Positions 2,273 to 33,954 of a stretch of DNA of 64,000 nt are shown here, piece by piece. The stretch lies in contig NW_025767224.1 of assembly GCF_003918875.1 (NCBI RefSeq), forward strand, positions 868,001 through 932,000. Reading direction: 5' to 3'. The notes below the pieces were generated by a model, which worked only from the letters and a program-made list of their open reading frames with translations, ran no database searches and was not told the DNA's origin. This DNA comes from Haliotis rubra (taxonomy: Eukaryota). The first letter of the stretch is position 1; every line of letters starts with the position of its first letter. Position numbers and translations under genes: made by a program.

Positions 2273-4298
<2,026 letters not shown>

Positions 4299-9970: not shown

Positions 9971-12574
9971 TCCACATTATAAACAGTGAAAATACTGTAA
10001 ACTGTCCCACATCCATTGTCCAAGAAAAAAACAACCGTGACAAAATTCACATAATTCATTTATTATTGCCTCACGTTTCTATGTATATCAAACAATACAC
10101 AAAACAAGCCTACTGTGTGTATATAATTTACAAGAGACACTTTTAATTGAGAACTAATCACTTACATTAATAAATGTAATAACAAGATGTATAAAGCATA
10201 GATTGTATGAACACTGACTGCACAGGACAATTGTTCCAACTCACAGTGTACCAGCCATGCAGACACCTGGACACATGAGACTGCGCTACACGCAGAAACA
10301 TAAACACAGCTTCTCACATTACCACCAAAAACCTTTGAAAATTCTAATACCAATTTCAACAAAATCAGCACTACCCTACTAATACATTGGAAGAGTCCAT
10401 CATGGACTGAGGGTAATCAGGTATATGATCCATATTTAGCACCACCAATGAAATATAATTTCAGCCATCAAAATCAGTTCCATAATTTTCATACCTGTTA
10501 TCCACAGAACCTTCAGAAAAGTAGCAAGTTTTCAATTCTACACAATAGTGAAGCACCATGGTCAGATGGAAACTTAAAATAAATGGATTTCTATTTCTGA
10601 ATCATGTTTCAGCACCATCAAACTGCTGGATTACATAATGCTCTGAAGTCTATCAGACAAAATGTCAGCAATGTGATGGCATTTCCCTAATAACTAAATC
10701 AAATCAGTTTAAAACATTTTTTCCGTTTTTCATAAAAATGTTGCAAATATTTTCCTTCACCATTACTATGTCACATTGACTTATCTCACTAATTTGGTCA
10801 TATGGTTGCAAAAGCTAATGGTAACCAGATTTTGATTCATTAACAGAATATTATTCTTCCTCTATGTCCAACATGTTAGCCATTCATGAACAAAAGTACA
10901 CTTACATCACTAACCTGAACATCGCTTTGATTTGTTCAAGAAACAAATTTTGCAAATATCCTACTGCAGTCCAATGTCAGAAACCAGGGGAGGTAATCCA
11001 TCTACTGCATCGCAGGTGCCCAATGCGTGCAAGATGATGAAGGTGAATATTAATCAATACAAAGGTAATTGGTGTATGATGAAGTATGAATTCATATAAA
11101 AATATATGTGCAAGAGTTTAAATGTTCATTTAGAATATCAGAACTAGGCAAATTACTCCTTCGCAAAGTAACTATGTGAAAATACATCCTTTTGTTAAGG
11201 CGGCCATTTCTCTCTAGGTTTACAACATGGTACAGAAGTTTTACAAAGGATGGATGGTAAAGCTAAGCAGTAATACACTTATGACATCTTATTAAAATTT
11301 CACAACAACAAAACTGCCACAAAGTTGTTCCTAAGAAAGATCCAGTATTTCCTGCAAGCCATTTAACTAAATTTTACCCCTTTGTCCAAGATTAGTTTCA
11401 CCTTTTCCCAATATTAAGGCCAAGTGTTGTTTATGTGTATCGAAAATTATCAGGGATGTCCTCTATTGTGGTTACCATGGCTACATGAAGGATAACGTGG
11501 TATCTTTCATCTTTGGTATGTTCCTCCTTGGAAAGATGAATGACATCCCATTAAAGAATGTGGTGTTGGTGTAGCTGTGATAGCACTCATTCAAACGCAG
11601 CCTTCCATCCATCAGCACAAATATCAGAGCATGCTACCATGCCTATTTGACAAACAAACTCAACTCATGATGTTGATGTGTACAAGTGATGGCGCTCTAA
11701 TTGAGACCAGTTATCTATTATGCTTTGAATGTTGCAGTTGGTAAGGGTAGATAACTCTAGTTACATGGAGACCAAATATCAACATAGATCTTGTAAAAAC
11801 AAACTGGTGAAGTTGATGGAGTTATCTCCCCTTGAGTAAGTTCAGCATGTGAAATTGCCAAGGGGGGTAATCATGAGATGACTGTATACAACGATGAATC
11901 AGACATTGAAGGATGACTTTTTCTACAATAAAAATCTTATTTACATTTGACATACATATCAGTTTGTGGATTAACATAGCGTCAATTCAAGCAAACAGGT
12001 TTAAATATATACCTGATAAAACATGTATAACTGATAAAAACACTTATTGTTGATGAAAAGAAAAGATAAAAATCTAAAACTATTCTGCTCAAAAACATAT
12101 ACAGGACATATATGTATATATTCATTCCCACCAGTACAAATGTTTAAAATCAACATATTTGCATTTGGTTTGTATGTATTTTACACAATTTGTTTCTACA
12201 ACACAACTATAGTATTATTAAAATACAAACCAACAACATGTGTTAATATATATATATAATAATAATAATATATAAACTCATTTGAATAAGCTACATAAAA
12301 TGTGACTTCTGTATGGTAGTTCTCAAGGACATGTACACAAGTAGAGATTGAAAATGAACACAATAACTTCAAAACATCATAGATGAATACTTGGTGTTTG
12401 TGAGCTTTGTTTTATATATTATAATTGTATTATGAATTTGACTTTTTTTCATATTTTATATCATCTTTTTCATAATAAAGTCATAAGTTAACAACACAAA
12501 CAATATTGAACACTTACTCATCACATTATAACATTGTATGTTTTCCCCCTTGGCACCATCAAGTGGGCTGCTGG

Positions 12575-13270
12575 AGAAAGTTTGACACACCTGGGATCCT
12601 GTGCAAGACTTTAGACACACCCAGGATCTGGTCTGAGAAGCTTGACACGTCCAGCATCTGGACTGAGAAGCTTGACATGCGCAGGATCATGTGCAAGAAG
12701 CTTGACATGCCTATTATCCTGTGCAAGAAGCTTGACATGCCCAGGACCCTGTGCAAGAAGCTTGACATGCCTACTATCCTGTGCAAGAAGCTTGACATGC
12801 CCAGGATCCTCTGCAAGAAGCTTGACATGCCTAGGATCCTCTGCAAGAAGCTTGACATGCCTACTATCCTGTGCAAGAAGCTTGACATGTCCAGGATCCT
12901 CTGCAAGAAGCTTGACATGCCTAGGATCCTGTGCAAGAAGCTTGACATGTCCAGGATCCTGTGCAAAAAGCTTGACATGCCTAGGATCCTGTGCAAGAAG
13001 CTTGAAACAGGATCTTGTGCAAGAAGCTTGACACCCTGCAATAATCTTTAAGAAGCTTGACCCAACAGGATCCCATGTAAGAAGCTTGACCCAACAGGAT
13101 CCTGTGTGAGAAGCTCGACACACCAGGATCCCATGTAAGAAGCTTGACCCAACAGGATCCTGTGTAAGAAGCTTCACCCAACAGGATCCTGTGTGAGAAG
13201 CTTTACACACCAGGATCCCATGTAAGAAGCTTGACACACCAGGATCCCAATTAAGAAGCTTGACACACCA
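12575..13270. repeat. 30-bp minisatellite (about 23 copies)
   Basis: Unit gtgcaagaagcttgacatgcccaggatcct with exact 30-nt period at 12691-12990; a 28-30-nt variant follows. Confidence 0.95.
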
Positions 13271-14277
13271 GTTCTTAAGCACAATTTTCCACTGACTTAC
13301 TGCGGTCACAAAGTTTAATTACATGAACTATTCAACCTCAATCTCAAAATGTCTACCTTCAGACTAATGCCCTCTTCCTAACAAAGATTTTAATACAGAT
13401 AAGCAGTTTGATTTTCAACTAAGATCTCAATACTGTAAATGGGGTTTGAATCAACCTTTAATTCTCCAAGTTGTCAACATCATATGTTTACTGAATAAAT
13501 GGTGGCCTCAAAACCAAGTGTGTACTCTGGATACATCATCGTTTAAAAATAGTCAGCAGCCAATGATAAATATCAAATTATTTTGCACTAAAAATGTATG
13601 TGACAATTAACAAACTTATTCAGTTTCAATGTTCCACAAAATGATTGCTAGTTCACTTGTGTGTCAAGCTCCTGCCGTGGTCCTCCATCCTCCTCCTCCT
13701 CCCGACTAATCCCTTCTACCACCCTTCCTCTCACTCACAAGGTTACATAATACATAGGATTTCTATATTTTCTATTATACATTCATTTACTTACACATAT
13801 ACCAAACCAGTAAACCTTTTCTTCATACAAAAATATCCCTGAATAAGCAGCTGATGGCAAATGTTTTGGCTAAGTACTTCTTGATTTCTTACCAAAAGTT
13901 CAGATAAGAGAAAGTTTAAGTCTTTACATCCGAGAATATGTTGTCTGCTAACACATGAAACTGTTACCATATTCGACATTTTAAGTGAACTGTTCTATTC
14001 AAAGCAAACATACTTTCCAATTTCTTAGCACAAGGGAAGTTGCAGTGATACAAAGCTTTATGATTCCTTTACAACAATGGATCCAGGAATTTCACAAGGT
14101 GATCTCGATAAAACATGCACATTCATGTATATATTATTTGGGGGCAATACATTGACATGTGACCACAAATTTTCATCCCAGACCCTCCCCCATCACAACT
14201 GTCCCAACTACAACTTATCCACAACAATCCCATCCTCAACTTATTCACCTCTCATCCCCAAACCAGTCAGTTCATCC

Positions 14278-17236: not shown

Positions 17237-20200
17237 CTATTCAAATGAATATCTATTCATGACATTATAGAGCACCCCACATCGGTATGGGTCTGGGGGC
17301 ATCTGACTCTCCGCAGTGTTGGGTCGGGCCATAAAGTCCCGGTCTTGGTTGACCGTTGGGCCCGCTGAATGAGTCAGTTTGGCTGCCGTCGAGTACTGCC
17401 TCTCTTCTAGAAATGGATACGGGGCGTTTTGATGAGGGTAAAGGCTACGATGGGGATATTCCCTATCAAACACAGAATGTTGAGTGGGTGTACTATGCGT
17501 CAGGAAAGCACTATTAGTATTGTCACCAACATGTTGCGGATGATACACAGGGTCTCTGGGATACATATATTTGTCTAAATTGAAACTGCTATTTACACCA
17601 ATGCCACTGAACACATCAGTGGAAGAAGTTTGGGGCAAACCTCGGAAGTCACTCATGGCTGTACCAGCAGTCTGACGATAACGCTCGTCGAAAGTTTTAG
17701 TGGCAGTTCCACATGGTGGCCTACTATAGTCTAATGTAGCAGTTCCTGAGTACGGATGACTTCCGAAATAACTCAATTCAAGTGGAAACGTCTCTGGGGC
17801 CAGTTCTCTCTGGGGCTGCGGAGATGAGAGGCTGGCAAACATATTACGCTCTGTCATTGTCCTAGAGGGGTCAAACATAAAGTCGCGACTGGCGAGGTAG
17901 TTGTCTTTGGCAAAGAGCGTTGCAGGTGTGGTGTTCGGCTGTCTATCTATTGTGCGCTGCAAGTATGGAGCCTGTGGCCAGTGAGGAGGCCGTACCTCCT
18001 GCCCCGACCATGTGTTTGTGAAGGGGTTCCTCTGCATGGTCTGAGGCATGGCAGTGGTGGGAAACATGTCCGTACTTGGCATGGTTGTTGGTCGGCGAAG
18101 AAGAGCTGGGTTAGTTGGTCTCAGTGCTGTGTCTGGGAGACGTGAAATAGCAGTTCTATCATTTTGAGGCAAGAAAGGTGTGGTCATTCTCTGCCTCATT
18201 GCCTCACTCTCCCCAAGCCTCATGAAACTGCTACCTGTGGTTTGTGCAGAAAAGATATTTTCATTCTGACGCAAGAAATTATTCTCTCTAGATACACTAT
18301 GAATTGAATTGAGTGGATTAAATGTTTCAAATGGGGCAGGGTCTGGCAGTCGTGGAAGCGCAGATGCTGTGTCCCTCTGGAAGTGTTGTTCCTGAGAACG
18401 ATCACAGGCCAAGATTTCCATGCGTTTATGGGACATATCATGAAATGGTTGCATACTTGTGTGAGTGATTACATTACTGGCCACAGATGCTGCTCTTGGG
18501 ATATCTCGACTGTCCTCATGAGGCTTCTCTGCCAGTTCTTCTAGCCTCTGGAGACGGTTAGGCTCTTCTGGAACAGCTTCTCTTGGAGTGTTGCCAGGTA
18601 CATTGAGGTCCTGGAGATACTGCCCCAGGTAATCCTTGTCACACTCAGGTGCATGGGCCTGATGAGGGAATTGAGCACTTGGTTGAGGAGGAGGTGGTGG
18701 TGGTGGTGGTGGCTGAGCATCATCTTTAGGAGGTTCCACACTAGGCAACGGTTGCTGCTGATCTTGGGACACTTGGGACAAAGGTTGATTGGACATGGGT
18801 TGGTTGGACATAGGTTCTGGATGAGAGAGTGGTTCTTGGATAGGAACAGGAACAGAGACAGGAGCAGGGAGAGGAGATTGCACAGGCTGCATCACTTCCT
18901 CCACCTCCTCTTCCTCCTCTGATGGGCTCTGAGGTGGAGGAGGAGCAGGTGCTCGAGGTGGAGTTAGGAGAATATCATTGGGGACTTCATCATCAGAGGA
19001 GACTCTCTGTTCTTCATCATCTCCTTGCTGTTCTTCAGTCTTTTCCTCAGGTTCCTCAACCAATGCTGGTGAGTACTGCCTCATATCCTGCTGAGAGTTC
19101 AGATCTTTCATAGTGGAATCATCAATAATAGGATTTTCCTCAAGAGATCTATCAATTGCCTCTTGCTGTGCTTGTCCAGGAGACATGGCCTCTTCTTTGG
19201 GCACTTCAAGGACAGTAGGAACTTCAAGTTCCTGGTAGGCTTCCTCTAAGTTCTCCTGCTTCTCCTCAATCTGTTCCTGTTCTCGTTCCTCTTGTTCAAC
19301 CGGCAGAGGCTGAGGCTGACCCTCACTCTCATTGTCACTGAGGAGTGGACTACACACACTGCGGTCACTGTGGGGGCTATGTGGACTTGGGGAACTGTCA
19401 TCACTCTCTGGACTTTGTGGTTTATGAAGAGTCTGTGGAGATGGAGGCTGAGGTTCTGGAACAACCTGGGGTTCAACTGGGATTTCTACTTCAGCTTCAG
19501 GTTCAGCTTCCGGCTGTGGTTCAGCTTCAGGTTCCTTCTCTTTCTCAACACTTGCTTCCTTCTCTTCCACCTGTTCCTTGGATTTATCTTCATCAACAGC
19601 AGCTGCCTTCTTAGTCTTTGTTTTCTTCACAGATGTTTTACCCTTAGGCTTTGTTTCCTTCTTCTTAGAAGGAGACTTCTTCTTTGCTGCCTTCTTGGTT
19701 TGTGGAGATACTTTCTTTTTTGACACTGGTGTCTTCTTCTTGGCTACTTCTGGACACACTTTCTTCTTCATTCCCTGAGACTTGGGTGATTTGGGTGACT
19801 TTGGAGTCTTTGGAGCTGCTGTTGCTTTAGGAGATTTGGGAGGAGTGGATGACTTGGTTGATTTCAATGCCTTTGTTGCTTTAGGTGACTTCACCTTTTT
19901 AACAGATTTCGGAGAAACCTTTTTGCTAGCCACAACTTTCTTCTTCTTCTTTTTAGGAAGTGTCTTTACAGGCTCCTTATCTTTCTCTTTCTCTTTTTCT
20001 TCCTCATCTTTTTCTGTTTCCTCCTTTGGTGCATCTCCATTAGATTTCACCCACTCCGGCAGAGGATTGTGTTTAGGCTCAAGTTTGGCAGCTTCATGAA
20101 GCTGATCAAGAGCTTCTCGTGTGAGGGTATGAACTCTTGGCTTGTCCCTACGGAATACAACTGGGAGGTCATCACCAGAATCATCATCATTGAAGTCATA

Positions 20201-20616
20201 CAGATCAATACCCTTATCAGGCTTTGCACTGGTAGACTGTTCACTTGTTGTAGCTGTTACAGCTGTTGTATCTGCAGCAGCAGCAGCATCAGTAACAGCA
20301 GCAGCAGCAGCAGAACCAGTAGCAGCAGCATCAGGGGCTGTAGGAGGAGACACACCATTCACTTTGGGCTCACTGCTGTTTTCACTACTCCCAGAAACAG
20401 GGGTCTCACGTGGCTGTTCCGAATCTTCTCCTGGCTTTTGTGTGTGGTGCCTCTTGATATGCCACTGTAAAGAGTTCCTCTGTCGACAGGAGAAGCTGCA
20501 CATAGTACATTTGATGGGTTTCTCATTGGTATGCTGCCTTTGATGCACCTTCAAGTTGTCGGAGTGCCGGAAGGACTTGCCACAGTCTGGCCACGTACAG
20601 TGATAGTTCCTCTCTC
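17237..20616 (-). CDS. Last coding exon of a large C2H2 zinc-finger protein (fingers 11-12, then K/SPK-rich, acidic/Pro-rich and aromatic-rich low-complexity tail); ZFP91/ZNF653/ZNF692-like finger array
   Basis: Open frame of about 1,126 codons; acceptor ttcag at 20617-20618 joins phase-1 to the donor at 31014/31015 to give the linker HTGERNY. Fingers CTWPDC...HQRQH and CTMC...HIKRH. Confidence 0.92.
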
Positions 20617-21884
20617 CTGAAACACACAACAGTCAGAGTCGGTTTTAGAAATACAAATACTTTTTAAATCAAGTAGGGACATTTAGGAAGAAAGGTTTTG
20701 GTAGCTTCTTAATCAATAGTAGCAGTGGCAAATGGCAGTTGTCTGGAGGTGAAATATTGAAATTTTACGGTCAAATAGTTTCATAGTAAAGAGTAATTCA
20801 GCTGAACCGACTACATCAAAGTGCTACTGCATGACCCTGATTACGGTGATAGTTATTTCCAACACTACTGACCCAAAGCACTTAGCCCTTCACTTACCAT
20901 TGGTACACAGTAAGGCTCGCCATTTAAAACCAACAATTTATATAAGTATTTTGTTGTTTATATAACATTGTATTACACATTTTCATACCTGTGCCTACTC
21001 AGCTCCTTTATTTTCACTTAGGTATCACTTGTTGTCACAAAGAAAGTATGTATCATGGGCCCAAGGCCTCTTTATTGAATAAATGTGTTTATCTGTCTAT
21101 TTCAAACTCTTAGATTTAAATGTCTTGTTTTGACTCATTTCATGGAGGCCCCAAAAGGATCTTAACACGCATGCAGATGCTATTTTGCCAGGTGAAATAG
21201 CAGAAATATGTGTCGTCAAATTTCAGCAAGTCATGTTATTAAGATAAAACAACTGGCAGTGTTCTAAATTAGGAGGGAAAGTCCTTGTCTAACCCTACTG
21301 TCAAACCGAAAGATTTCGAGTCCCATGATTCATCTACCATTTCTGTAAATCATGACATTATTGCGAGCATTTTATTAATGCGCAAAATGTGTCTGTACTC
21401 TTCTCGCACTATAATGATGGTGCATTTCAGTCCGACCATGACTACTTTTAATAACTTAATAAAAGACAGAAAACGTAAATCTGTTGACACTACACATTAC
21501 ACCAATACAGGTCACTTCCTCATTACAGGTATCTCAAACCACATGTAATTATCACTGGTTACAACCACTGGTCATTGTCTAAAGTCACTCAAGCACATCA
21601 GCCAGACCGGACATTCTCGAACCTAGAAGTCTTTGAAGTCAGATTACGTTATACATGTTGTCATAAGACAAGTAGTAGCAAGCAATCGCGTGATCAAACA
21701 AGGCAGCGTACTCAAAACATCATCTGCTCATTTCTATTCATTGCATCACAAGCTCAGGTTATTTGGTAAATAACAAGTGTGAAACGAAAAAGAACAACAA
21801 ATATTCAGGTTGTCACATTTTATCATCAACAGATTCCTGAGCTTGCATTAATTTTGTGACGCATTGATTTCATGATTTACAGTA

Positions 21885-22404
21885 TAGTCTGTTTGCAGTG
21901 AAAACATACCGATGAATTTCACTTTAAACAAAAAAGTAAATCGAATAAAGTGAAATTAAGATTGTGAATCCTCATAAATTTGACCTTGCCAATTGAACAT
22001 TTAAGAGAATTTTATTCATCTTAGGATAAAAGTTGTTTAACAAACGATCATAGTTTCAAACCGCTATTATTGGTATGTATTACATGGGGGTATGCACACT
22101 AGATGAAACACCGAGAACAAGTAGGGTTAGTCTAAGTTAAAGCTCATCACGAACCTCACGTGCATTTGTGTCACTGTCCAACTACTATGCTTACCCCCTT
22201 GTAATACAAACCAATAATAGCGATTTGAATCAATGATCGTTTGTTAAACAACTTTTATCCTAATATGAATAAAAATTCTGAGATTTAAATGTTGAGTTGG
22301 CAAGGTAAAATTAAGAGGATTTGCAATCTTAATTTCACTTTATTTGATTTACTTTTTTTGTTTAAAGTGAAATTCATCGGTACGTTTTCACTGCAAACAG
22401 ACTG
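21885..22404. mobile_element. Foldback MITE with about 215-bp inverted arms, TA TSD (Tc1/mariner-type termini)
   Basis: (t/c)agtctgtttgcagtgaaaac...catgggggtatgca on the left is the reverse complement of tgcttaccccttg...gttttcactgcaaacagactg on the right; TA flanks at 21883-21884 and 22405-22406. Confidence 0.88.
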
Positions 22405-23767
22405 TAGCAGGAGGTGAAAAAAATGATCCTACCTGCCTACCTACCTGTCCTAAAGTTTAAAGAGGTGTAATTTGAACCACAACATTTTTTTTTATTTGGC
22501 CTAATATATCCATCCCGCCTGAACTGCATGGACAAACAAATATACAAATTCAGCAATAAATTCTGATAAATTCTGCAACCATTCTTCAGGAATCCTTCAC
22601 AAAGTTCTGCAATATGATATTTTTTCCAGAAATCAAAGCCTTTTTTGACAACTGAATCCATGATTTGTGAACTGACAGTCAGAGCATGAAACAGAAAGAC
22701 ATGTGTTTCCCTTAATCACAATACAAAAGTCGGATTCATTTGGAAACGAAAACAGAATATTGATTTTAACACTTCTATCATGTAAAAGTCTTGTACAATC
22801 AATTGTAGAATGTGGACTGTTCTAAAACAAATACCATAAATAATTATTTATAGGTATCACATAAAAATGTTTTTAAATTGACACAAAAAACAAACAATTT
22901 ATTGATATGTTGACGGTTTGTTTCTGAACGCCATTACAACTTTCACATACTGAGAACTGTTTTTTAATGTGAACTGAAAACTTCCAATGTATTTTGACCA
23001 TGTTCTGCATACAAGGTGACTTTCCTCAAGATACATCTCTCGTGGGTACAGTTGAGTGGTTCAAGGTGCAGAGTCCAGTTGCTTTGCAGTAGCAAAACTA
23101 ATGACAAGTAATAACCAGACTGCAAGACGCAAGCTAATTCTACTGTTTACACTGACGCTAACTGAATACAACCAGCATCCCCATGACCCACTACTCCGGT
23201 GCAGCAACAGGCACAGAAACAGATGGACCATTCCCATCTCACCATAATCATATTTAATTTGTACAAGGATGAAAATCAATCTTAGAACAATAATTCTAAG
23301 GTTTTGATGCATTTTGGAGGTCGGAGAGCAAGAAAGAAGGAAAATACACTCAAATTAATTTCACATTATGGTACAGATTTTAAGCCTTTGTGCTTAAAAC
23401 ACTATTAGGCAGACCAAATTATTAATCCTCCAGCCAAAAATGACTTATTTTGCAATTTTGATATTGATTTTTCTTCCGCTACATGTTCAGTTGACCTGTC
23501 TTTCCAGTGTTGTATACAGAGCAAGCTGAGCAGACGGCTTACTTTAGTTTGGACAGTTAACAAGACAATGTCGATATTTCACATACAACAGACGTGAGCT
23601 GAAAAACATGCCAAGGACTAGATAGAATTATATAATGTATGGGTTATTCATCAAAATGTGTTTTTCATCTTTCTTGATTCCTGTTTTTGACTTTCAATAT
23701 CAAAATTGTAGGCTGCTGAAACTGGTCAAGGCACCACCATCGTGCATCCCTTACATAGTACCCAACA

Positions 23768-24062
23768 ACCCCAAACCCTGTGAAGCCTTCCATTTCTAGG
23801 GTTACCCAGCCCCAAACCCTGTGAAGCCTTCCATTTCTAAGGATACCCAGCCCCAAACCCTGTGAAGCCTTCCATTTCTAGGGTTACCCAGCCCCACACC
23901 CTGTGAAGCCTTCCATTTCTAAGGTTATCAAGCCCCAAACTTGTGTGAAGCCTTCCATTTCTAGGGTTATCAAGCCCCAACCTTGTGTGAAGCCTTCCAT
24001 TTCTAGGGTTACCCAGCCCCAAACCCTGTGAAGCTTTCCATTTCTAGGGTTACCCAGACCCT
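23768..24062. repeat. 41-42-bp minisatellite (about 7 copies)
   Basis: Unit cccaaaccctgtgaagccttccatttctagggttacccagc. Confidence 0.92.
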
Positions 24063-24949
24063 GTTCCTACCTGAAGTCTACCAATTCTTGGATCATCCAG
24101 CAGTATGCCCTGTGAAGCCTACAATTTCTGTAAGATGATCCAGACCCAAACCCTGACTTTAACCTAGGATTTCTATGATCGTGCTAACAAGCCTGTCTGA
24201 CCCCACCCCATCCCACTGTACCACCACCCAATATACACCAGTAACCACCAACCAAAGCCCACAATCCATCCCTTCAACCCTGATTCACTTATAACAAACA
24301 GTCTGAGATATGGAGGAAGATAGTGGAGAAAAAGCGTTGTTCCATTTGTGAGTGCATCAATTGCCTCTCTCCACCTCTGCCAATAATTAGGACCAAGTAG
24401 AACCAGGGAACATGGGCTGCCTTTGACTGTGGCTAGTTGAGCTTCCCCGACTCAATACTCAGCAGGCGGATGCAAATTCTCAACTGTAAGAGAGATGCCA
24501 ACCAACAATCATTTATTGATTCCAGCAGTATATTGGTGTGTCTGCAGCTTGGCCACTCCTGATTCGTCAGCTCACCCCAGGATTAAGCGGTTTATTCCAA
24601 GCGTTACAGAAGCAGTCTCTATCACTCCAATTTAATTACTGTGGCTGTGTTTGCCTCATTAAGCTGTCCCACTCCTAACAGTAATCAAACATAATGGGAT
24701 ATGCCATTTCATATTTAGGGGCACCAGCACTCATGCAAATATATCAAGGTCCTCCATCACGTGGCATGGATTGGTAGAAAGTGGAATGTCTAAATACAGC
24801 TGATGAAAAAAGAAGCTCTGTGTCTGTCCTGAAAGACAGTGGCTTTAGCCGAAGAAGCCAGGGAGCGATGTGTTCCCATATGTGGAACGGAACCCAGACT
24901 TAAACTTAAACTTATTAGTGGCTGGCCTCAGTAGATACAATCCTCACAT

Positions 24950-25960
24950 GATGACAATCTTCCATAATATATTTCCCATGGTTACAATTCTACCATTACA
25001 TATTCCCTACATAGCAATCTCCCCATTACAAATTCATTACTTAACAATTTTTCATTATATATTCTTAATGAAGAAGGGGCGGTGAGGTAGCCTAGTGGTT
25101 AAAGCGTTCGCTCCTCACGCTGACCCGGGTTCGATTCCCCACCCGGGTTCGATTCCCCACATGGGTAGTGTGTAAAGGCCATTTCTGGTGTCCCCTGTCG
25201 TGATGTTGATGAAATATTGGGGTAAACTAAACTCACTCACTCTTAATGATGACAATCGCCAATTTAATGTTTACCACATAACAATTTCCTATCATACTTT
25301 CCCTACAGATAGCATTCTTCAAACATGTATATTCACGAAATGATAACAACCTCCTATTACAGTAAATACTAATCTCATACTATATTTTCCCAGAAGATAA
25401 CAATCTTCAAATATATACATTTCCAACACAACATTAACAATCTCCCATTACATATTCTCTACAGATAACAATTTTAAATTACATATTCCCTAAATGATAA
25501 CAAATGATAATAATCTCCCATAATATATTCTCTACAAGACAAGCATCTTCTGATATTTATGCCCCACAAGATAGGTACCTTCCACTATATATTCCCTGCA
25601 TGACAATCTTCCTTTATATAACTATATAATCCCCTACATCGTACCATATTGACACAACCCTTCAGTGAATTACACATTCGCTACATAACCTTATTTCATG
25701 ATAAATTCTTCCTATAATCCACAAATGATAATCTTCATCACATAATCCCTACATTAAACAACGTTCCATCATATAATCTCACATACAAATCTTTAATCAT
25801 GTAATCACTATAAGATAACAATCATCCCGGATATAATCCTTACATGATAACAATCTTCCATTATATAATCCTACATAACATTTTTCAAATTAATAATCCC
25901 TACATAACAAAACCAGCTGCTACTTCATAACCCCTACTTAACAATCCTTCTCTATAAATC
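24950..25960. repeat. Highly decayed tandem repeat of about 33-36 bp, interrupted by a SINE
   Basis: Recurrent cattatatattccctacatgataacaatcttc-like units. Confidence 0.7.
25076..25240 (+). mobile_element. SINE family A with duplicated B-box segment
   Basis: ggggcggtgaggtagcctagtggttaaagcg...acccgggttcgattcccc twice; (actc)n tail; TSD tcttaatga at 25063 and 25241. Confidence 0.88.
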
Positions 25961-26813
25961 AATACACAATAACCATCCTCCATAATTAATCACATCATAC
26001 TTGTCTCTATCCTTTTGATTCCAATTCAAACAAGACAACATTGATATACCAAAAAAATGCAATTCTACTTGAGCTGCACTTGAGAATTCCCGATCTCCAT
26101 GGCCAAATGTGTATGTTAATGAAGTCAGCCAGCCCCCCTCACCTGCCGGCAACCACAAGCTGTGACTGATATCTTCCACAACAAACACATCATTACTTGC
26201 AACATGAATCATGCCCGTATTGATCCACAGGTTTGGTGGCTGCAGGTGAGGTCTGCCTGTAATTGCTCCCATGCTTCAGATATACTGTTAATCAAACAAT
26301 TGCAACTGGTTCCATTCCGTCTTACTAAATGTGTTTTTCTCATTTCACCAGTGACATGCAATTGTTGCATTAGCTGCACAAATACTGATTTAACTTATTA
26401 CCTGGCCAGGTTTGTTGAAATGACTGTGAATGGAGCTAATTCTAAACTCAATTGATTCCTGTTTAAAAAACAAATCCTTCTCATCATCCTATGGAGCAAA
26501 ATCAATACAACTTTGGTGGAGACAATGTCATTCAGGTAAAAAAATGCATCAATGTGATTGGCTAATTCCCATCAGCAAATCCCAAGCCCAACACCAGGTG
26601 CAGTGGAGGGCAGTCAACTGAAACCTGTCACAAGCCAGGTGTGAAGATCCTGAGGTAATCAATATTGGTGAAGATGGCCTGTGAGATCTGCAACACCCTA
26701 GGCGTGGAGGAATCGTGCTGCCAAACCACTTCCTCTACTGCTAGAGAAGCTAGTTGCTAAAACAACAAAACAAGTCTCTTCCAAAAAGTCTACTGGCCCC
26801 AACTTTTTATCAG

Positions 26814-26988
26814 TGAGTGAGTGAGTGAGTGAGTATGGTTTTACACCGCTTTTAGCAATATTCCAGCAACATAACGACAGGTGGACACCAGAAATGGGTT
26901 TCACACATTGTACCCATGTGGGGAATCGAACCTGGGTCTTCGGCGTGACGAGCGGATGCTTTAACCACTAGGCTACCCCACCACCGCC
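26814..26988 (-). mobile_element. SINE family A, full length, 12-bp TSD
   Basis: TSD actttttatcag at 26802-26813 and 26989-27000; (gagt)n tail. Confidence 0.9.
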
Positions 26989-29689
26989 ACTTTTTATCAG
27001 ATGTTAATCTAAGTACTATATGGACTTGTACAAGTTGACTTTACTGACCATAACAACTTTGATGCTTGTGGAAATGACTGCAAGATGCAAACATCAACTT
27101 CTTCATGAAATGTAAAATTTCAAAACTTAGCTCAGAACAATGGCTGTCACAGAGCAGTGTGCCCGAAAAACATAATGAGGGAGTATCCTTGCAGAAATGA
27201 AACCTATTATGAATACTGGGCCACCCTGATAACAATTCTTGCTAGTTTTACATTTATGAATAAAATATTCAAATACAATGAATACGCCAAATACAATTGG
27301 ATAAGGCTAAACTATGTTTGCGATCACAGACAATCAGAAACATTGAACCGCTTTCATGCTAAGTTGTGCCCTGCATTTTGCTAAACGCGAGTTAGGGAAC
27401 CCGCCTGGGAAAGTCTCCTACTGGAAAATAATTTAAGTTTACTATGAAGCTGGGGTGCACAAAGTTTACCATAAAAAACAGTATGTGTGATATACAATGC
27501 CAATATTTCATATACGGGCAATGCAACCAACTTGAACCTGCATTGGACCGTCATCACTCTCCTCAAGTTAAGGCAAAACAATGACTTGACCCCAGAAGCA
27601 ATAAAAGCCTGTAAGAGGTCTGTATCGGGACAGAGTACTTTGGGTGCATATGCCAAGTTTAATTCTGAACTTCATAACAAGGGGATATTGTAAACCTGAG
27701 GACAAACTTTGATGATCATAGTCCATCTTCATTGAGTCTTTCAAAGTCTTTATTGTATGTTACGTATGTTAGTTATTGGCTATGTAAGGCAACATGTAAA
27801 ACTTTGGCAAGCTATTTCAACTTGTTGTTTTGATAAGTCGTAAAGTTAGTTGAGAGTTGTTACAATTATTTGTACCGTGTTACTTTCTAAAGAAAATGTA
27901 AGATCAAGTTATGCTTTTACTTTATTGGTTAAATGTTATCTTATGCATTCCAGTTCTAAATGCCCTTCAAAGATTTGGTTAAATGTTTGTCAAAGAGTTC
28001 ATTCACATGGCACCCTGCAAGGTAAAGTGACTTATTAACTGTTTGTTTCGTGACATTTCATTGAATATTTACTAGAGTGGAAACAGAAGAAAGTTTATAT
28101 CTTGTTTTGTCAAATACAAACCGGACAAATCATAAAACAGTGAGCTCATCACATCTGGCTCTTGAAATGTTCATACACAGAACCACAAAAATGATTTAAT
28201 TCCATGAATGTGGTTGATGTGTACTTGGTTGATGGTCAGTTGTCCTAGTAATCTCCAACTATAAACAACCTGATTTTGATAACTGCAAGCAGGTATTTGG
28301 GGACTGATGACACAGGTAATGGCAGCTTGTAACACAAAATGGCAGAAATGCAGTATCGCGATACATCTCAAGCCTCAGTATCGAGATACGTATCGTATCA
28401 TTAGGCACCTGTAATGTGACATCCCTATCGTCTACATCATCAAATGATCGAGTCATCTATTGTAAAGTAACCTAATCCAATTTTGTTTACAATGTCATTT
28501 GATATGCATTATTCAAGTTGGATGTTCAGTCAATCATAAAATCTATGAATGATTAAATATTACCACACTCAGCATTAACTGGTTTCGCATCAGGCACTGC
28601 ATTTACATGACTATAGTACTGTCGGAAATAGAAAAAAACTGTTTTTAGGCTCTTACTCTGTATCCCTAAAATTTACACAATTGCAAATAGCATATGTCGA
28701 AATAACCCACTTCGGCCTAACTGGGCGTTCAGTGGGATGCGTAATACGATATCCAGAAAAGCATGTTTACTCGTAAAATCGGGGAAAACTTAGAAAAAAT
28801 ACGAATAGCTGCTGAAAACAATAGATCAGACTATAGATGGCAATTAGGTCGCTCAGCCAGGTATGCCGACAGACCGTCGACTCACCTGGCATGAAATGCA
28901 CGTGCTGCCCACAGGCACAAAGGGTCATCTCAAAGATATTTTGTGCTTTTTCATGTGTGTTGACTATGTCTCATCTACTGATTAACATCTTACGTGTCTT
29001 TCTTTCATAAAGTTTATGTTGAGATATGTAAGAGTATGATACCCGAAAACATACCCTAGTATATAGGTGGCATGACCACCCAAAGATCGAAAGGACTGGA
29101 TATTATTTGTAAATTGTTTTGGCGTGCCGTGTACCTCCCCAGCATAATTGCCCTAAAGGATTATCTCATCTTAGCTGATATCTCTATCCCCAAGCCCGAC
29201 CCCAGGTTTTGCTTTTGAGGCGACCCCTCCTATCTGTTTCTTTTTATAGTGACAGTGAGACTGCATGGTAGCTACATCCTTAATAGTTTCGGCATAAATG
29301 TTATTATTTTTTACATCAGCTATCGTTTATAATGAATCTACGTCTAATTTCAAATTGGGAATTTAAAAAGTGTCCTTTGTAATACAATATCGTCGCACAC
29401 TAATTTGCATAAAGTCATGGTCTGTTCCAAATAAGTCTTTTTGGACTTCGAAAAAAAACGCATTGCTCATTTCTGCACTAATTTCCCCTCAGTAAAGTCC
29501 TTTTTCTCCGTTTCCAATCTCTCTACCACTGAGACTGTAGTTAGGCCGAACTTAGTTTAACAGATATTGCACACTTTCACATATGAACTACATAAATTGT
29601 AGAGATAAATGAGAAAATACAGTTTTTTTATACATTTCCTGAACCATTTAGGATTCTAGTGTGTCGATGATTTGTGTCAGGATACTAGT

Positions 29690-30422
29690 ATGCCTGTACC
29701 ACGTCATGATATCAGTATGCCTATTATACATTTCCTGTACCACGTCATGATACCAGTATGCCGATTATGCACTTTCTGTACCACGTCAGAATATCAGTAT
29801 GTCGATTATGCATTTCCTGTCATGATACCAGTATGCCGATTATGCATTTCCTGCACCACACCATGATACCAGTATGTCGATTATGCATTTCCTGTACGTC
29901 ATGATATCAGTATGTCGATTATGCATTTCCTGTACCACGTCATGATACCAGTATGTCGATTATGCAATTCCTGTACGTCATGATACCAGTATGTCGATTA
30001 TGCATTTCCTGTACGTCATATCAGTATGTCGATTATGCATTTCCTGTACGTCATGATATCAGTATGTCGATTATGTATGTCGATTATGCATTTCCTGTAT
30101 CGCCATGATATCATTATGTCATTTCCTGCATTTCGTCATGATATCAGTATGTCGATTATGCATTTCCTGTACCACGTCATGATACCAGTATGTCGATTAT
30201 GCATTTCCTGTACCACGTCATGATATCAGTATGTCGATTATGCATTTCCTGTACCACATTATACCAGTATGTCGATTATGCATTTCCTGTATGCGTTTTC
30301 ATAATGCGTCCATGATATCAGTATGTCGATTATGCATTTCCTGTACGTCATGATATCAGTATGTCGATTATGCATTTCCTGTACGTCATGATATCAGTAT
30401 GTCGATTATGCATTTCCTGTAC
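29690..30422. repeat. 38/41-bp minisatellite (about 18 copies)
   Basis: Unit gta(cca)cgtcatgatatcagtatgtcgattatgcatttcct. Confidence 0.93.
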
Positions 30423-31014
30423 ATACAAGACCAGTAATATTCAAAATCAACCACCTAATTTACCCGATTACAAAACAGATGTCAGCAGTATTTGTTTTTC
30501 ACCCTGTCAAAAGTAGTCATCACCAATACCAGTTTCATCCAAAGCCACAATACAGAATTAGTTTCTACAAACCCACCCCTTCAAAATACCTGTGTTATAC
30601 TCTCAACAAGTGTGTTCACAATCATGTACCAATCGTCGGGGGTTTTGGTCTTGTCTTGTTCTGTATATCTAGGAGTCCCGTGAAAAAGATACTCAGTTAA
30701 GATGCACAGAAAATGCTGTGGCAAAAAAAAGCCGATTTTGCATTTATCCTGTTAACATGTCAGTTCTGTTTTGATTCAATCTAATATCAATCCCTACTTT
30801 CAATCCAAAAAGGCTCTCAGATATTACTTGTGACCTTCCTCACCATGTTAATGCCTGCAAGAGTGAACAATAGATTGCATATTACCGCGTAAAACCTAGA
30901 CTTAACCAGCCTGCCATTTGACCACAGTAAACACCGAGAGCAAACAGTTGGCAGTTTACCCCACGGAGAAACAAAGTGTCAACAGTTTAACACACTTCTC
31001 CTTGTCTGACTAAC

Positions 31015-33954
31015 CTGTATGTGTGATTTCATGGCGCTTCAGATGACTTTTCTTGAAGAATGAGAAACTGCACCCCTCGGCCGAGCAGTGATACTTCTTC
31101 TCCCCAAGCTGGTGCAACTCCTCAGCATGGTTTTTGAGGAATTTGGCTGTACGGAAAGTCTTACTGCAGCCATCAATGTCACACTTAAATGGCCTTCCAG
31201 TGTTGTGGCTTTCCATGTGACACCTCATCGCATTCACTGTCTTGAATGCTTTCTCACATTTCTCGCACTGGAACGGCCTACTTTCAGCGTGAAGACGTAA
31301 GTGGCGCTTCATGTGCTCCTCTTTATAAAACATCTTATCACATTCCCGACATTTGATTGTCTTCTGCCGCTCCTGGTGAATGTTCTGGATATGTTTGTGT
31401 AAGTTCGCCTTGTAATTGGACTGGTAGCTACACAGTTCACACGTATAAAGTTTGGGTTGATCAGGGAAATGTGTACTTATGTGAACCTTGAGTCCTGATT
31501 CATACTTAAACTCTTTGCTGCACTCCTTACAAACAAGCGGCACTTTACCCTTGCACTCCTCCATGTGTTTCTCCAGAGTGTCCTCCCCCCTTCGGGACAT
31601 CGTATATATCGCGAACACAGCCGACACAACTTAAGGTCACCCTTGTTTTTATGCTCCTCCGTGACGTGTTCCTCTAGTGCCTCCTGTGTCGTACAAACAA
31701 ATGGACATTTAAAACACATTATGACATCATGAAGCAACATGTGTTTAGCAAACACAACCCGTTTGGCAGCATCAAAATCACATCTATCACACTTAAATTT
31801 GGGTGGTTTTCTTATGATTTGATGAGCACGTTTCATATGTCTGGTTAATGCTGCCAACCCCCGTGTTTTGTGACCACACATAGAACACTCTCGAGTCTCT
31901 AAAATCTTCTTTTCTTTGTAAAGCTTTGAATTCACTAATTTGTTTTCACTTGTACTGGCCCCGGACTGTCGCCCTCAGCTGCAACACTGTTATCTTTGAC
32001 TTCACCGTCTTTATTGTTCTCTGCTCCTTCCACATTCTCCGCACCAGCATCTCCTATATCACTTTTAACACCAACACCTACCGTACCATTCTCAGATACG
32101 CTGGCCAAAAGTTCAGACGAAGCACCAACGCCATTGTTCTCTACATTCTCTTTACCCTCACCATCTGCCAATGGCTTCTTCGCAACTTTTTTCTTCTTTT
32201 TCACAACTTTCTTTACTTCACCATCACCATTTCCAATACTTTTCTTCTTTTCTTTTCAGGTGAAGGTTTAACCACCTGCTTCTCAGAAGCAGATGGCTCA
32301 CCATCTGAAACTTTCTCCGCCGACTTCTCTGCACTCTCACTTTCCTCTGATTTCCTCTTCTTTGCTTTTGCCTTCTTCAGTGGTTTTGTTTTGTCTGACA
32401 TTTCCTTTTCATCTATAGTGTCAGTCTTTGTCAAACCATTTACCTTCTCTTTGCCCTTCTCTTTTGGCTTTTTGGCTTTGGAACTTTTGGGTTTCTTTTT
32501 AGCCTCTGGTTTTGCTGCACTTTTACTCTCAGCATTTGCTGATTCTGATTTCAATGTCAATTCAGATATATCCATTTTCTCCTGCTCCTCAGAAGTGACG
32601 TTCTCAACAGTAGTTTGATGTGCATCACCGGCAGCATCAGATGCTGCTGGTTTGACTGCACTCTCAACCTTCATCTCAGAGTCAGTTCCACCAATACCGC
32701 TGTCACTAGAACACTGTGCATTCTCATGGTTGTCTGGACTTCCCATCTGCTCACAGGCTGCCTTTGACACAGACTGTTCCGTTGTCTTGCTGGTTACATC
32801 TTTCTTGGTTTTCTTTGCTGCCTTTTTCTCTTTCGCCTTCTTCACTGGCTCCTTAATGTCGGGTTTGCTTGATGCATCTGGCTCCTTAGATTCCTTGACT
32901 TTACCCTTCGCACTTTTGCTTTTTGGAGACTTCTTGGGCTTCGGACTGACAGTCTTTTCTCCTGGAGAATCAGATGTCTTTTCTGCAGAGCTGTTTCCCT
33001 TAGACTTTGAACTCTGTGGCTTCTTTGTAACTTTGGGTTTTGAAACTGGCAGTGTTTTCTCATCTTCTTGTTCATCATGAAACTTCCTTTTCTTTGGCGT
33101 CCTCTTTGATCGAGACTTGGCCCCTGCCTCACAGGGTTTCGGTTCAGCCTGATCCACAGCTGAGGGACTGCCATCCTTCAGCGGCGCACCAGGCAACTCA
33201 GACACACTTTCACTTTTCACATTTCCATTTACTGAAGTTTTCTTTTCCACATTCTTTTTCACTTTCTCACTATCATTAAAATGAAGTTTTTCCTTTGTTT
33301 TCACGTCATCATTACGTCTTTTCTTAGGCGGTTTCCTTGGAGGTGTCTTAACGATGATATCGCCCCGAGCGACTTCATCAATGATGCTTTCATATGAACA
33401 CACACTTGCTACTGGTTCCTTTGTTGGGGGTTCAGGAGTCAAAGGTTTGTTTTCTTTGCACTCCTGTTCCTCCGCCTTCGGTTCAGGCTGATCAGGAACT
33501 GGATTTGAAGTTGCAACAACAGGTTCAGGGTTACAGTTGTCACATTCCACATGGTTTTCTATAGCAGGTACATCTTCACACACCTCGGGCACAGCATTAT
33601 TGAAATCCAAACATTCTGTTATAGAATTCACAGCTGCCGCTATCTCATCGGGACCTTCGTTGTCGACTTCTACTGCACCTCCATCAACTGCCTGCGCTGG
33701 CACATCAGGAGAAGCAGTAGAAGGGTGACAGTTCTGACCATCCCCTGAAGTCTCAACCTTCTTCGACTTCTTTACTTTCTTGACTGTTTTAGGGAGGACA
33801 GCCTTCTCTACATCCTCCCTGTCCCGCTCAACGATGTCCTTTTTCTTCACGTCCTTATCAATTTTAGTCCTCATTATCCTGGACTTCTCTCTCTCTCATG
33901 ACCAGCAGATGACCTTCACATTCAGCACTATCACCCTTCACCAATAGAGTCCAT
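31015..33954 (-). CDS. Large exon of the zinc-finger gene: K/E/S-rich N-terminal region plus fingers 1-10; reading frame broken by apparent 1-nt homopolymer deletions
   Basis: ORFs 32213-33874, 31935-32204, 31477-31935 and 31010-31627 join into one protein if one base is added at each of three homopolymers. Donor ACAG|gttagt at 31015, acceptor tttcag at 33955-33956. The first 80 nt next to the gap have no clean frame, so the start is uncertain. Confidence 0.85.

What the first reader, a model, noticed from the sequence alone, without database searches (positions are those of the whole stretch)
20177..20209. CTCF-like YDF cohesin-binding motif in a non-CTCF 12-finger protein
About 80 aa after the last finger the protein reads GIDLYDFNDDD (YDF at 20192-20200), an isolated aromatic island within low-complexity sequence. 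It fits the hydrophobic-Y/F-x-F-acidic motif by which CTCF (VYDFEE) and other partners bind the STAG-RAD21 surface of cohesin. A multi-finger protein with this motif and H1-like tails is a candidate undescribed architectural or insulator factor. Unlike in CTCF, the motif is C-terminal to the fingers. The motif is seen directly; the function is inference, and such short motifs occur by chance.
Basis: partly seen in the sequence, partly recalled or inferred. Interest (0 to 1): 0.72.

Follow-up and report, generated by a model that had tools for sequence, protein, structure and literature searches.

The report
Conserved cohesin-type YxF motif, spiralian zinc-finger protein
An abalone gene for an uncharacterised 12-zinc-finger DNA-binding protein has a ten-residue island (D-L-Y-D-F plus acidic residues) in its disordered tail. 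The island is kept almost unchanged in molluscs, annelids and ribbon worms and closely resembles the peptides by which CTCF, MCM3, SGO1 and CENP-U dock onto cohesin, so it is a testable candidate for a non-CTCF cohesin partner.

Summary
Window 20177-20209 (minus strand) encodes IDLYDFNDDDS, with YDF at 20192-20200, 82 residues after the last finger.

**The gene.** The window is Haliotis rubra. The gene has two coding exons, 33874-31015 and 20616-17240. An RNA-type contig confirms the splice. Three frame breaks in exon 1 are assembly indels: read-derived contigs of four runs remove them, giving a 2078-aa ORF.

**The family.** The protein has 12 fingers, lysine-rich SPK tracts and a conserved but disordered C-terminal region. 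It is not CTCF, REST or H1. An exhaustive profile search found 51 clusters. All named ones are from Mollusca, Annelida or Nemertea and are uncharacterised.

**The motif.** It is present in 34 of 37 members that carry the post-finger region.
- Y and F are invariant (34/34) and D at -2 is kept in 30/34.
- Position -1 is hydrophobic, +1 is E/D, +4 is S/D/E and +5 to +7 are acidic.
- The flanks are unconserved.
- The core fits the published cohesin CES-ligand pattern in 33/34 members.
- SIM, LIR, CtBP, FFAT and AP2 patterns fail.

It is therefore a real short linear motif. Cohesin STAG-RAD21 docking is the best-fitting partner (about 0.45) but was not tested. I rate it a new member of a known kind, interest about 0.6.

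The parts
17237..33874 (-). Whole coding span of the gene: two coding exons plus one 10.4-kb intron. The corrected product is 2078 aa.
   Evidence: ORFs. 100% match to the NCBI H. rubra model P0001. Full-length H. rufescens ortholog P0030, 2080 aa. Corrected ORF has a single terminal stop and is 92% identical to P0030.
31015..33874 (-). Coding exon 1: start codon, lysine-rich disordered N-terminal tail (about 660 aa) and fingers 1-10. The assembly has three indels here: 2 extra letters at 31585, 2 extra at 31959, and 1 letter missing after 32247.
   Evidence: Three overlapping frames. Contigs of four runs, including the same-species run X1, all show the same three indels. Removing them gives one ORF. 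Pfam finds nothing in the tail. No conserved island in N-terminal tails of 14 orthologs except K-rich runs.
31019..31887 (-). Zinc fingers 1-10. Finger 4 is atypical, of C2HC/CCCHC type.
   Evidence: Pfam zf-C2H2 hits, regex finger list, alignment with orthologs. DNA-contact positions are conserved across three phyla in fingers 5, 6 and 10.
20617..31014 (-). Intron (GT..AG, phase 1) holding two 41-bp-period tandem arrays.
   Evidence: Donor and acceptor read. An RNA-type contig of run X6 joins 31015 directly to 20616. Tandem repeats.
17237..20616 (-). Coding exon 2 (last exon, stop at 17237-17239): fingers 11-12, linker, YxF island, basic SPK tract, acidic and proline-rich tracts, conserved C-terminal region.
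20444..20599 (-). Zinc fingers 11 and 12.
   Evidence: Pfam zf-C2H2 and zf-C2H2_16. AF2 pLDDT about 90. Recognition residues R-D-N-V and R-x-S-W are conserved in 11-14 of 14 orthologs.
20177..20206 (-). The conserved ten-residue island D-L-Y-D-F-N-D-D-D-S (positions -2 to +7 around Y1092). This is the candidate cohesin CES-docking motif.
   Evidence: Sequence. Position table over 34 family members. D, Y and F are the only invariant linker columns in alignment A3. Matches the regex quoted in PMC10238091.
20141..20167 (-). Semi-conserved hydrophobic-basic element (LPVVFRRDK) 9-17 residues after the motif's Phe (F1094).
   Evidence: Anchored windows and alignment A3: gastropods have F-[RK]-R-[DN]-K, bivalves have L-[RF]-Q-[DE]-K or LLRK.
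20057..20065 (-). P-L-P element, equivalent to PLPP / PPLPP in most orthologs, 25-45 residues after the motif.
   Evidence: Alignment A3 consensus 'PLP'.
19625..19963 (-). Basic K/S/P-rich tract with repeated SPK / TPK (the 'H1-like' tail).
   Evidence: 36 K+R per 100 residues at 1201-1300, and eight S/TP(x)K motifs between residues 1187 and 1267. No linker-histone domain in Pfam.
17240..18655 (-). Family-defining conserved C-terminal region (residues 1607-2078), rich in Y/P/Q/R, ending ...LYNVMNRYSFE. Predicted disordered except for a short helix DKDYLGQYLQDL (18605-18640).
   Evidence: Alignment A2. Profile search found 51 clusters only. AF2 mean pLDDT 44, with the helix at 77.

Best explanation
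The gene encodes a spiralian-restricted, sequence-specific DNA-binding protein with 12 C2H2-type fingers flanked by long disordered tails. The island D-[LVMI]-Y-[ED]-F-x-[S/D/E]-[DE]-[DE]-[ED], 45-294 residues C-terminal to the last finger, is a short linear motif kept by purifying selection.

Its most likely job is to dock the two aromatic side chains into the composite pocket (the 'conserved essential surface', CES) formed by the cohesin subunits STAG/SA and RAD21. The acidic run, or a CK2-phosphorylated serine at +4, would contact the basic rim. This would tether or stall cohesin at the protein's DNA sites, in competition with other CES ligands such as WAPL, SGO1, MCM3 and CTCF.

Shown: the sequence, the gene structure, the transcript junction, the family range, the conservation, the disorder and the pattern match. 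Inferred: nuclear DNA binding, from the fingers and their conserved contact residues. Not shown: the cohesin partner and any effect on loops or cohesion.
For: **Conservation**
- The motif is present in 34 of 37 family members that carry the post-finger region. These span Gastropoda, Bivalvia, Annelida (Paralvinella) and Nemertea (Lineus, Tubulanus).
- Y is 34/34, F 34/34 and D(-2) 30/34. Position -1 is L/V/M/I, +1 is E22 D10 N1 A1, +4 is S24 D7 E3, and +5 to +7 are D/E. Flanking columns have entropy above 3 bits.
- D, Y and F are the only invariant non-finger columns in A3.

**Pattern match**
- The core [PFCAVIYLM][FY][GDEN]F fits 33/34 members. The full published regex [PFCAVIYL][FY][GDEN]F.{0,1}[DANE].{0,1}[DE] (PMC10238091) fits Haliotis and 13/34 overall.
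- In 26/34 members the failing position is a serine in a CK2 context (S-x-x-D/E). Serine exchanges with D/E across lineages, which is typical of a charge that matters.

**Likeness to validated ligands, from papers**
- CENP-U PIDVFDFPDNS has a crystal structure and a Kd of about 4 uM; SGO1 is SNDAYNFNLEE (PMC11182772; PMC10279526).
- MCM3 is DPYDFSDTEEE (translated from the repair template in PMC9159944).
- CTCF has Y226-D-F228.
- Haliotis GIDLYDFNDDD shares I-D-hydrophobic-aromatic-D-F-x-D with CENP-U.

**The receptor side is old**
- STAG pocket residues are preserved in all orthologs surveyed (bioRxiv 10.64898/2026.10.19.760054).
- Fly CTCF Y248/F250 binds SA-Vtd directly (PMC7880997).

**Context**
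- The motif lies in a disordered linker: pLDDT is 40-50 around it and 55-59 on it.
- It is the only strict match in 2078 residues.
- DNA-contact residues of fingers 5, 6 and 10-12 are nearly fixed across three phyla, as expected of a site-specific binder.
- Rival motif classes fail: SIM 4/34; LIR, CtBP, FFAT and AP2 0/34; B56 1/34.
Against:
- Only 13/34 members satisfy the strict published regex.
- The motif class is degenerate and of micromolar affinity. The SGO1 peptide failed in peptide arrays although the protein binds (PMC11182772), so sequence fit is neither sufficient nor necessary.
- Three divergent members lack a canonical motif: P0045 has DDWAFWE, and P0076 and P0081 have none.
- The distance from the fingers varies from 45 to 294 residues.
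- In flies and other invertebrates the CTCF YxF motif binds cohesin without making CTCF a strong loop anchor (PMC7880997; bioRxiv 10.64898/2026.10.19.759930). So even true binding would not prove an architectural role.
- Acidic-aromatic islands can also serve as activation or histone-binding motifs.
Confidence: 0.45

Rival explanations
1. The island is a functional short linear motif for a partner other than cohesin. Candidates are an acidic-aromatic transactivation motif that binds a coactivator (Mediator, CBP/p300 or TFIIH-type pockets), or an acidic 'cap-anchor' that binds histones, possibly regulated by CK2 phosphorylation of the adjacent serine.
For: The island is an acidic run with two aromatic residues in a transcription-factor-like protein. 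A CK2-type serine follows F in 26/34 members. It is flanked downstream by a basic element and a PLP(P) element that could belong to a larger composite site. Only 13/34 members meet the strict CES regex.
Against: Activation and histone-binding acidic motifs usually tolerate shuffling of their hydrophobic positions. Here the spacing Y-x-F and D at -2 are fixed across three phyla, which points to a defined two-pocket receptor. The only well-described receptor known to me for D-hydrophobic-[YF]-x-F-acidic is the cohesin CES. The specific alternative classes I could write as patterns (SIM, LIR, CtBP, FFAT, AP2, B56) fail.
Confidence: 0.4
2. The island acts within the protein itself. The acidic-aromatic patch would fold back on the neighbouring lysine-rich SPK tract or on the fingers to auto-regulate DNA binding, with no external partner.
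For: A strongly basic tract (36 K+R per 100 residues) follows within about 80-200 residues in Haliotis. K-rich tracts occur in all orthologs.
Against: Charge-driven fold-back needs no fixed Y-x-F spacing or invariant aromatics. AF2 shows no contact between the motif and the fingers, and the linker stays unstructured. The order and distance of the motif and the basic tract differ between phyla: in nemerteans the motif follows a basic tract.
Confidence: 0.1
3. The match is a chance occurrence without function.
For: Short motifs do arise by chance. 2.5% of shuffles of this one protein give a strict regex match, and 15% give a core match.
Against: The island is retained in 34 of 37 members across Mollusca, Annelida and Nemertea, inside otherwise unalignable disordered sequence.
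Confidence: 0.02

Closest known systems
CTCF N-terminal YxF (Y226-D-F228) cohesin-docking motif
   Same: A multi-finger, site-specific DNA binder carries a hydrophobic-Y-D-F-acidic island in a disordered region near the finger array. A basic stretch lies nearby. The YxF core is conserved across bilaterians in CTCF, as it is across Spiralia here.
   Different: This is a different protein family: 12 fingers, only generic similarity to CTCF fingers, and its own C-terminal region. The motif is C-terminal to the fingers and 45-294 residues away, against about 40 residues N-terminal in CTCF. No KTYQR-type second motif was seen. Binding was not tested.
MCM3 YDF region (DPYDFSDTEEE) and CENP-U FDF motif (PIDVFDFPDNS)
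   Same: They share the extended pattern D-hydrophobic-[YF]-D-F followed by S/D/E-rich residues. MCM3 also has a serine/threonine-acidic (CK2-like) tail after F, as do most family members here.
   Different: These are replication and kinetochore proteins, not finger proteins. Their motifs are restricted to vertebrates or mammals, whereas this one is spiralian-wide.
SGO1 Y335-N-F337 and PHF2 YEY motifs
   Same: They are aromatic-x-aromatic CES ligands in disordered regions. In SGO1 a nearby phosphosite (T346) raises affinity, which parallels the putative CK2 serine here. PHF2 shows that a chromatin reader can use such a motif C-terminally.
   Different: The flanks, protein classes and biology differ (centromere protection; H3K4me3 reading).
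Lineage-restricted insulator zinc-finger proteins of arthropods (for example Su(Hw), 12 fingers)
   Same: The concept is the same: a clade-specific multi-finger DNA binder that may supplement CTCF in chromatin organisation. This comparison rests on my own knowledge.
   Different: No sequence relationship was tested or seen. The arthropod factors work mainly through CP190/Mod(mdg4), not through a described CES motif.
REST (the NCBI automatic name of the H. rubra model) and linker histone H1
   Same: REST is a multi-finger repressor. H1 has K/S/P-rich SPKK tails.
   Different: No REST protein appears among the homologs, and there is no C-terminal finger. There is no H1 globular domain. Both likenesses are nominal or compositional.

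Membership tests
Cohesin CES (STAG-RAD21) F/YxF ligand motif | Core hydrophobic-[FY]-[GDEN]-F | tested here: met
   Haliotis has L-Y-D-F. The core fits 33/34 family members when Met is also allowed at -1 (M is not in the published class). The one miss has VYAF.
Cohesin CES (STAG-RAD21) F/YxF ligand motif | Acidic residues within 1-4 positions after F (regex .{0,1}[DANE].{0,1}[DE], as quoted in PMC10238091) | tested here: met
   Met in Haliotis (N-D-D-D). Strictly met in 13/34 members. Most others have x-S-D-[DE]-[ED], where S sits in a CK2 context and alternates with D/E.
Cohesin CES (STAG-RAD21) F/YxF ligand motif | Lies in an accessible, disordered region | tested here: met
   AF2 on alignment A3: fingers have pLDDT about 90, the linker 40-50, the motif block 55-59, with no secondary structure. 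The composition is poor in aromatic residues.
Cohesin CES (STAG-RAD21) F/YxF ligand motif | Evolutionary conservation of the two aromatic residues | tested here: met
   Y 34/34 and F 34/34 across three phyla. Three further members lack the motif.
Cohesin CES (STAG-RAD21) F/YxF ligand motif | Direct binding to SA-RAD21, dependent on Y/F and on the CES pocket | not testable with these tools
   The structure tool takes a single chain only, and no biochemical data exist for this family.
CTCF | Eleven-finger array orthologous to CTCF (high identity, especially ZF3-7) | tested here: not met
   PDB search: the best CTCF chain scores 108.7 bits over 178 residues, below ZNF568 (152 bits) and similar to other generic poly-finger hits. 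The family has 12 fingers and its own C-terminal region.
CTCF | YxF motif N-terminal to finger 1 | tested here: not met
   The only match lies C-terminal to finger 12. N-terminal tails have no conserved island.
REST / NRSF | Orthology to REST, with a finger cluster plus a separate C-terminal finger | tested here: not met
   No REST protein appears among the hits of three word searches. There is no finger after residue 1010 by regex or Pfam.
Linker histone H1 | Globular winged-helix H1/H5 domain | tested here: not met
   A Pfam scan of all four coding pieces finds zinc-finger families plus a few weak sub-threshold matches (one non-finger, Cas_Csy3, below cut-off), and no H1/H5 domain. The tails are H1-like in composition only.

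The most novel reading that the evidence does not exclude
Spiralians (molluscs, annelids, nemerteans) have their own site-specific 12-finger protein that captures or stalls cohesin through a C-terminal CES-docking YxF motif. It would be a non-CTCF boundary or anchor factor for loop extrusion or cohesion, with polarity opposite to CTCF relative to its finger array.
Probability: 0.2. Interest if true: 0.85.

Novelty: new member of a known kind. Interest (0 to 1): 0.6.

Why it matters
How chromatin domains and cohesin positioning are set outside vertebrates is an open question. The review PMC10658181 states that evidence in spiralians is almost absent and rests on CTCF-site enrichment in one squid. 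Two 2026 preprints argue that invertebrate CTCF, although it keeps YxF, is a weak loop anchor.

A deeply conserved, clade-specific finger protein with a CES-type motif gives a concrete and cheap hypothesis to test. The tests are a peptide pull-down, a complex prediction, and CUT&RUN compared with Hi-C in oyster, abalone or Platynereis-type models.

If the partner is not cohesin, the result still defines an unannotated spiralian transcription-factor family with one sharply conserved docking motif. It also corrects a truncated, misnamed gene model.

Tried and rejected
**Alternative motif classes.** I tested these on the 34 motif windows: SUMO-interaction motifs (4/34 parallel, 0/34 antiparallel), LIR (0), CtBP PxDLS (0), FFAT (0), AP2 FxDxF (0) and B56 LxxIxE (1). 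All were rejected. Position -3 is K/T/M/V/R/G and so on, which excludes a hydrophobic-x-hydrophobic-hydrophobic SIM core.

**Family identity.**
- CTCF, REST and H1 identities were rejected.
- I looked for orthologs outside Spiralia. A word search with the finger array returned the family, then generic 30-finger ZNF236-type proteins at about 30% identity. That is uninformative rather than negative.
- The ESM Atlas feature search gave no usable hit.
- The fold of the conserved C-terminal region is predicted disordered (pLDDT 44), so no fold search was run.

**Taxa of unnamed members.** Two cluster look-ups and two contig look-ups gave no organism names for the ENA, Logan and JGI members.

**Literature and earlier notes.**
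- Li et al. 2020 was not held under the PMC id I guessed from memory (PMC7035113). The regex and peptide data were taken from papers that quote it.
- The scan's earlier notes held nothing on this gene.

**Introns and assembly gap.** Small introns as an explanation of the three frame breaks were rejected in favour of assembly indels. The run of N at 34076-34233 was left as it is.
Full report
**1. The observation**

Window 20177-20209, read on the minus strand, encodes I-D-L-Y-D-F-N-D-D-D-S. G is the codon before it, and Y-D-F lies at 20200-20192.

The stretch lies in the 3.4-kb last exon of a minus-strand gene. In residues 1011-1600 of the protein there are only 3 Tyr, 2 Phe and 1 Trp, so 'isolated aromatic island in low-complexity sequence' is accurate.

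The published cohesin-ligand regex, quoted in PMC10238091, matches once in the whole protein. It matches in 2.5% of composition-preserving shuffles of the protein and in none of 5000 shuffles of the local disordered stretch.

**2. The gene**

The window is Haliotis rubra. The last-exon product is 100% identical to an NCBI model named 'RE1-silencing transcription factor-like', 1321 aa.

Exon 1 ends ...ACAG|gt at 31015. Exon 2 starts after ...tttcag| at 20616, which gives the classic finger linker H-T-G-E-R-N-Y-H-C. A contig of run X6 continues from 31015 directly into the letters of 20586-20616. This is a spliced transcript from a closely related abalone.

Upstream, the window splits the coding sequence into three overlapping frames. 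The H. rufescens ortholog, in contrast, is one continuous 2080-aa protein.

Read-derived contigs of four runs were laid on 31000-33900. One of them is from the same organism label and nearly identical. All four lack two letters at 31585 (a G/C run), lack two letters at 31959, and carry one extra letter after 32247 (an A/T run).

Applying these three changes gives a single ORF of 2078 aa with one terminal stop, 92% identical to H. rufescens. The frame breaks are therefore assembly errors, and the public H. rubra model is truncated because of them.

The protein has the following parts, in order:
- A lysine-rich disordered N-terminal tail of about 660 aa, with no Pfam family.
- Twelve fingers: 11 canonical C2H2 fingers plus an atypical fourth finger that is kept in orthologs.
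- An Ala/Ser/Thr-rich linker of about 80 aa.
- The YxF island.
- A hydrophobic-basic element and a PLP element.
- A very basic tract with eight S/TP(x)K repeats.
- Acidic and proline-rich tracts.
- A conserved 470-aa C-terminal region ending LYNVMNRYSFE.

**3. The family**

A word search with the C-terminal region found orthologs in gastropods and many bivalves.

A profile of that region (alignment A2) was then scored against 1.84 billion representative proteins. Only 51 clusters matched.

Every member that carries a source name comes from one of three phyla:
- Mollusca: Haliotis, Batillaria, Aplysia, Elysia, Candidula, Solemya, oysters, Pinctada, scallops, Mytilus, Potamilus, Mercenaria and Mya.
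- Annelida: Paralvinella.
- Nemertea: Lineus and Tubulanus.

The names are 'uncharacterized', 'hypothetical', or automatic misnomers driven by low-complexity sequence ('titin homolog', 'ATRX isoform', 'axoneme-associated protein mst101(2)-like'). No paper in the library mentions the locus ids.

The finger array gives only generic hits in the PDB. ZNF568 is the best, and CTCF reaches 108 bits. A word search gives only generic ZNF236-type hits outside the family. The family is therefore neither CTCF nor REST.

DNA-contact positions of fingers 5, 6, 10, 11 and 12 are nearly fixed across the three phyla. Examples are N-A-N-K, x-x-H-R (-1 and +2 vary) and R-D-N-V in 12-14 of 14 sequences. This argues for a conserved, specific DNA target.

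The C-terminal region is predicted disordered (mean pLDDT 44) apart from a short helix, DKDYLGQYLQDL.

**4. The motif across the family**

Of 37 members that include the region after the last finger, 34 have exactly one island of the form D-[LVMI]-Y-[ED]-F-x-[S/D/E]-[DE]-[DE]-[ED].

| Position | Residues observed |
|---|---|
| -2 | D30 N3 T1 |
| -1 | L19 V9 M3 I3 |
| 0 | Y34 |
| +1 | E22 D10 N1 A1 |
| +2 | F34 |
| +3 | variable |
| +4 | S24 D7 E3 |
| +5 to +7 | D/E (a few S/N/G) |

Columns on either side have entropies above 3 bits.

In a 17-sequence alignment from finger 11 to 70 residues past the motif, D, Y and F are the only invariant columns outside the fingers themselves. N-terminal tails have no comparable island.

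The distance from the last finger is 45-190 residues in molluscs and the annelid-type members. It is 208-294 residues in the nemertean sequences and some unnamed ones.

There are three exceptions. P0045 has DDWAFWE 18 residues after the fingers, and P0076 and P0081 have no such island.

AF2 on the alignment models the two fingers confidently (pLDDT about 90). It leaves the linker unstructured (40-50), with a slight rise on the motif (55-59) and a weak helix 25 residues later. This is the signature of a functional short linear motif.

**5. What it most likely binds**

The core fits the cohesin CES-ligand pattern in 33/34 members. The strict regex fits in 13/34, including Haliotis. In most others the only mismatch is a serine at +4, which sits in a CK2 context and alternates with Asp/Glu between lineages.

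The likeness to experimentally validated ligands goes beyond YxF:

| Ligand | Peptide | Source |
|---|---|---|
| CENP-U | PIDVFDFPDNS (crystal structure, Kd about 4 uM) | PMC11182772, |
| SGO1 | SNDAYNFNLEE (crystal structure in PMC10279526; affinity raised by a nearby phosphosite) | PMC11182772, |
| MCM3 | DPYDFSDTEEE | PMC9159944, |
| CTCF | Y226-D-F228 | as cited in these papers |
| Haliotis (this gene) | GIDLYDFNDDD | |
| Annelid members | DVYDFHDSDDE | |
| Bivalve members | DLYEFKSDDE | |

The receptor surface is ancient. [quoted passage not shown] It also works in a protostome, because fly CTCF Y248/F250 binds SA-Vtd directly (PMC7880997). PHF2 shows that a chromatin-bound factor can use a C-terminal aromatic-x-aromatic motif to meet cohesin (PMC11790891).

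Other motif classes that I could express as patterns fail on the family.

My proposed mechanism is as follows. The fingers place the protein on specific DNA sites. The flexible tail presents the island, and Y and F insert into the STAG-RAD21 pocket. The acidic or phospho-serine run adds affinity. Cohesin is thereby retained, stalled or protected from WAPL at those sites.

The finger, disorder and conservation steps are shown or follow from the sequence. The partner and the consequence are inference. I put the cohesin reading at about 0.45, another external partner at about 0.4, intramolecular regulation at about 0.1, and chance at about 0.02.

**6. Cautions**

- The motif class is degenerate and weak. 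A perfect-looking SGO1 peptide failed in arrays (PMC11182772).
- Invertebrate CTCFs keep YxF without acting as strong loop anchors (PMC7880997).
- I could not retrieve the mollusc STAG, RAD21 or CTCF sequences, and I could not run a complex prediction. The decisive computation is therefore still open.

**7. Novelty and verdict**

The motif type is known. Its occurrence in a deeply conserved, unannotated, spiralian-restricted 12-finger family has not been described, as far as the tools and the paper library show. I file it as a new member of a known kind.

It is a well-founded, directly testable lead on an open question: how cohesin is positioned outside vertebrates (PMC10658181). It is not yet a demonstrated mechanism. 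Interest is 0.6.

Noticed in passing
window 31585, 31959, 32247: Three assembly indels (two 2-letter insertions and one 1-letter deletion, two of them in homopolymer runs) break the 5' coding exon into three frames. The public H. rubra gene model starts at MSRRGEDT and lacks about 757 N-terminal residues, including fingers 1-3. Contigs from four sequencing runs agree on the corrections.
   Followed up: yes
window 20141-20167 and 20057-20065: Two weaker conserved elements lie downstream of the YxF island. One is a hydrophobic-basic patch: F-R-R-D-K in gastropods, L-R-Q-D-K or LLRK in bivalves. The other is a PLP / PPLPP element 25-45 residues after the motif. Together they may form a composite docking region.
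   Followed up: partly
window 17240-18655: The family-defining C-terminal 470 residues are well conserved across three phyla (Y/P/Q/R-rich blocks, ending LYNMMNRYFE-like). Yet they are predicted almost fully disordered (pLDDT 44), with one short helix, DKDYLGQYLQDL. This is a conserved disordered region of unknown role.
   Followed up: partly
P0045, P0076, P0081, P0086, P0211 (family members from unnamed ENA/Logan assemblies): A divergent subgroup lacks the YxF island. P0045 has DDWAFWE instead. P0076, P0081, P0086 and P0211 share a different conserved acidic element, L-[DE]-S-P-[IV]-S-[DE]-[DE]-E ... L-S-L-P-P-R-P. Their taxa could not be identified.
   Followed up: partly
window 23769-24061 and 29693-30422: Two tandem arrays with a 41-bp period (7 and 18 copies) lie inside the 10.4-kb intron of the gene.
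   Followed up: no
window 2273-3412 (minus strand): A 379-aa ORF that reads as the C-terminal part of an alpha-tubulin (ending in an acidic EGEEY tail). It is the downstream neighbour gene. This was recognised by eye and not searched.
   Followed up: no
window 57879-58787 and 60050-61962 (plus strand): Two near-identical ORFs (302 and 314 aa) and following ORFs look like parts of a repeated mobile element of retroelement or tyrosine-recombinase type. They were not searched.
   Followed up: no
window 34076-34233: A run of 158 N (assembly gap or mask) lies about 200 bases upstream of the start codon. It was left as it is.
   Followed up: no
window 12506-13309: Long ORFs on both strands are produced by a tandem repeat with a unit of about 10 residues (KKLDMPRILC-type). 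This is probably a satellite rather than a gene.
   Followed up: no
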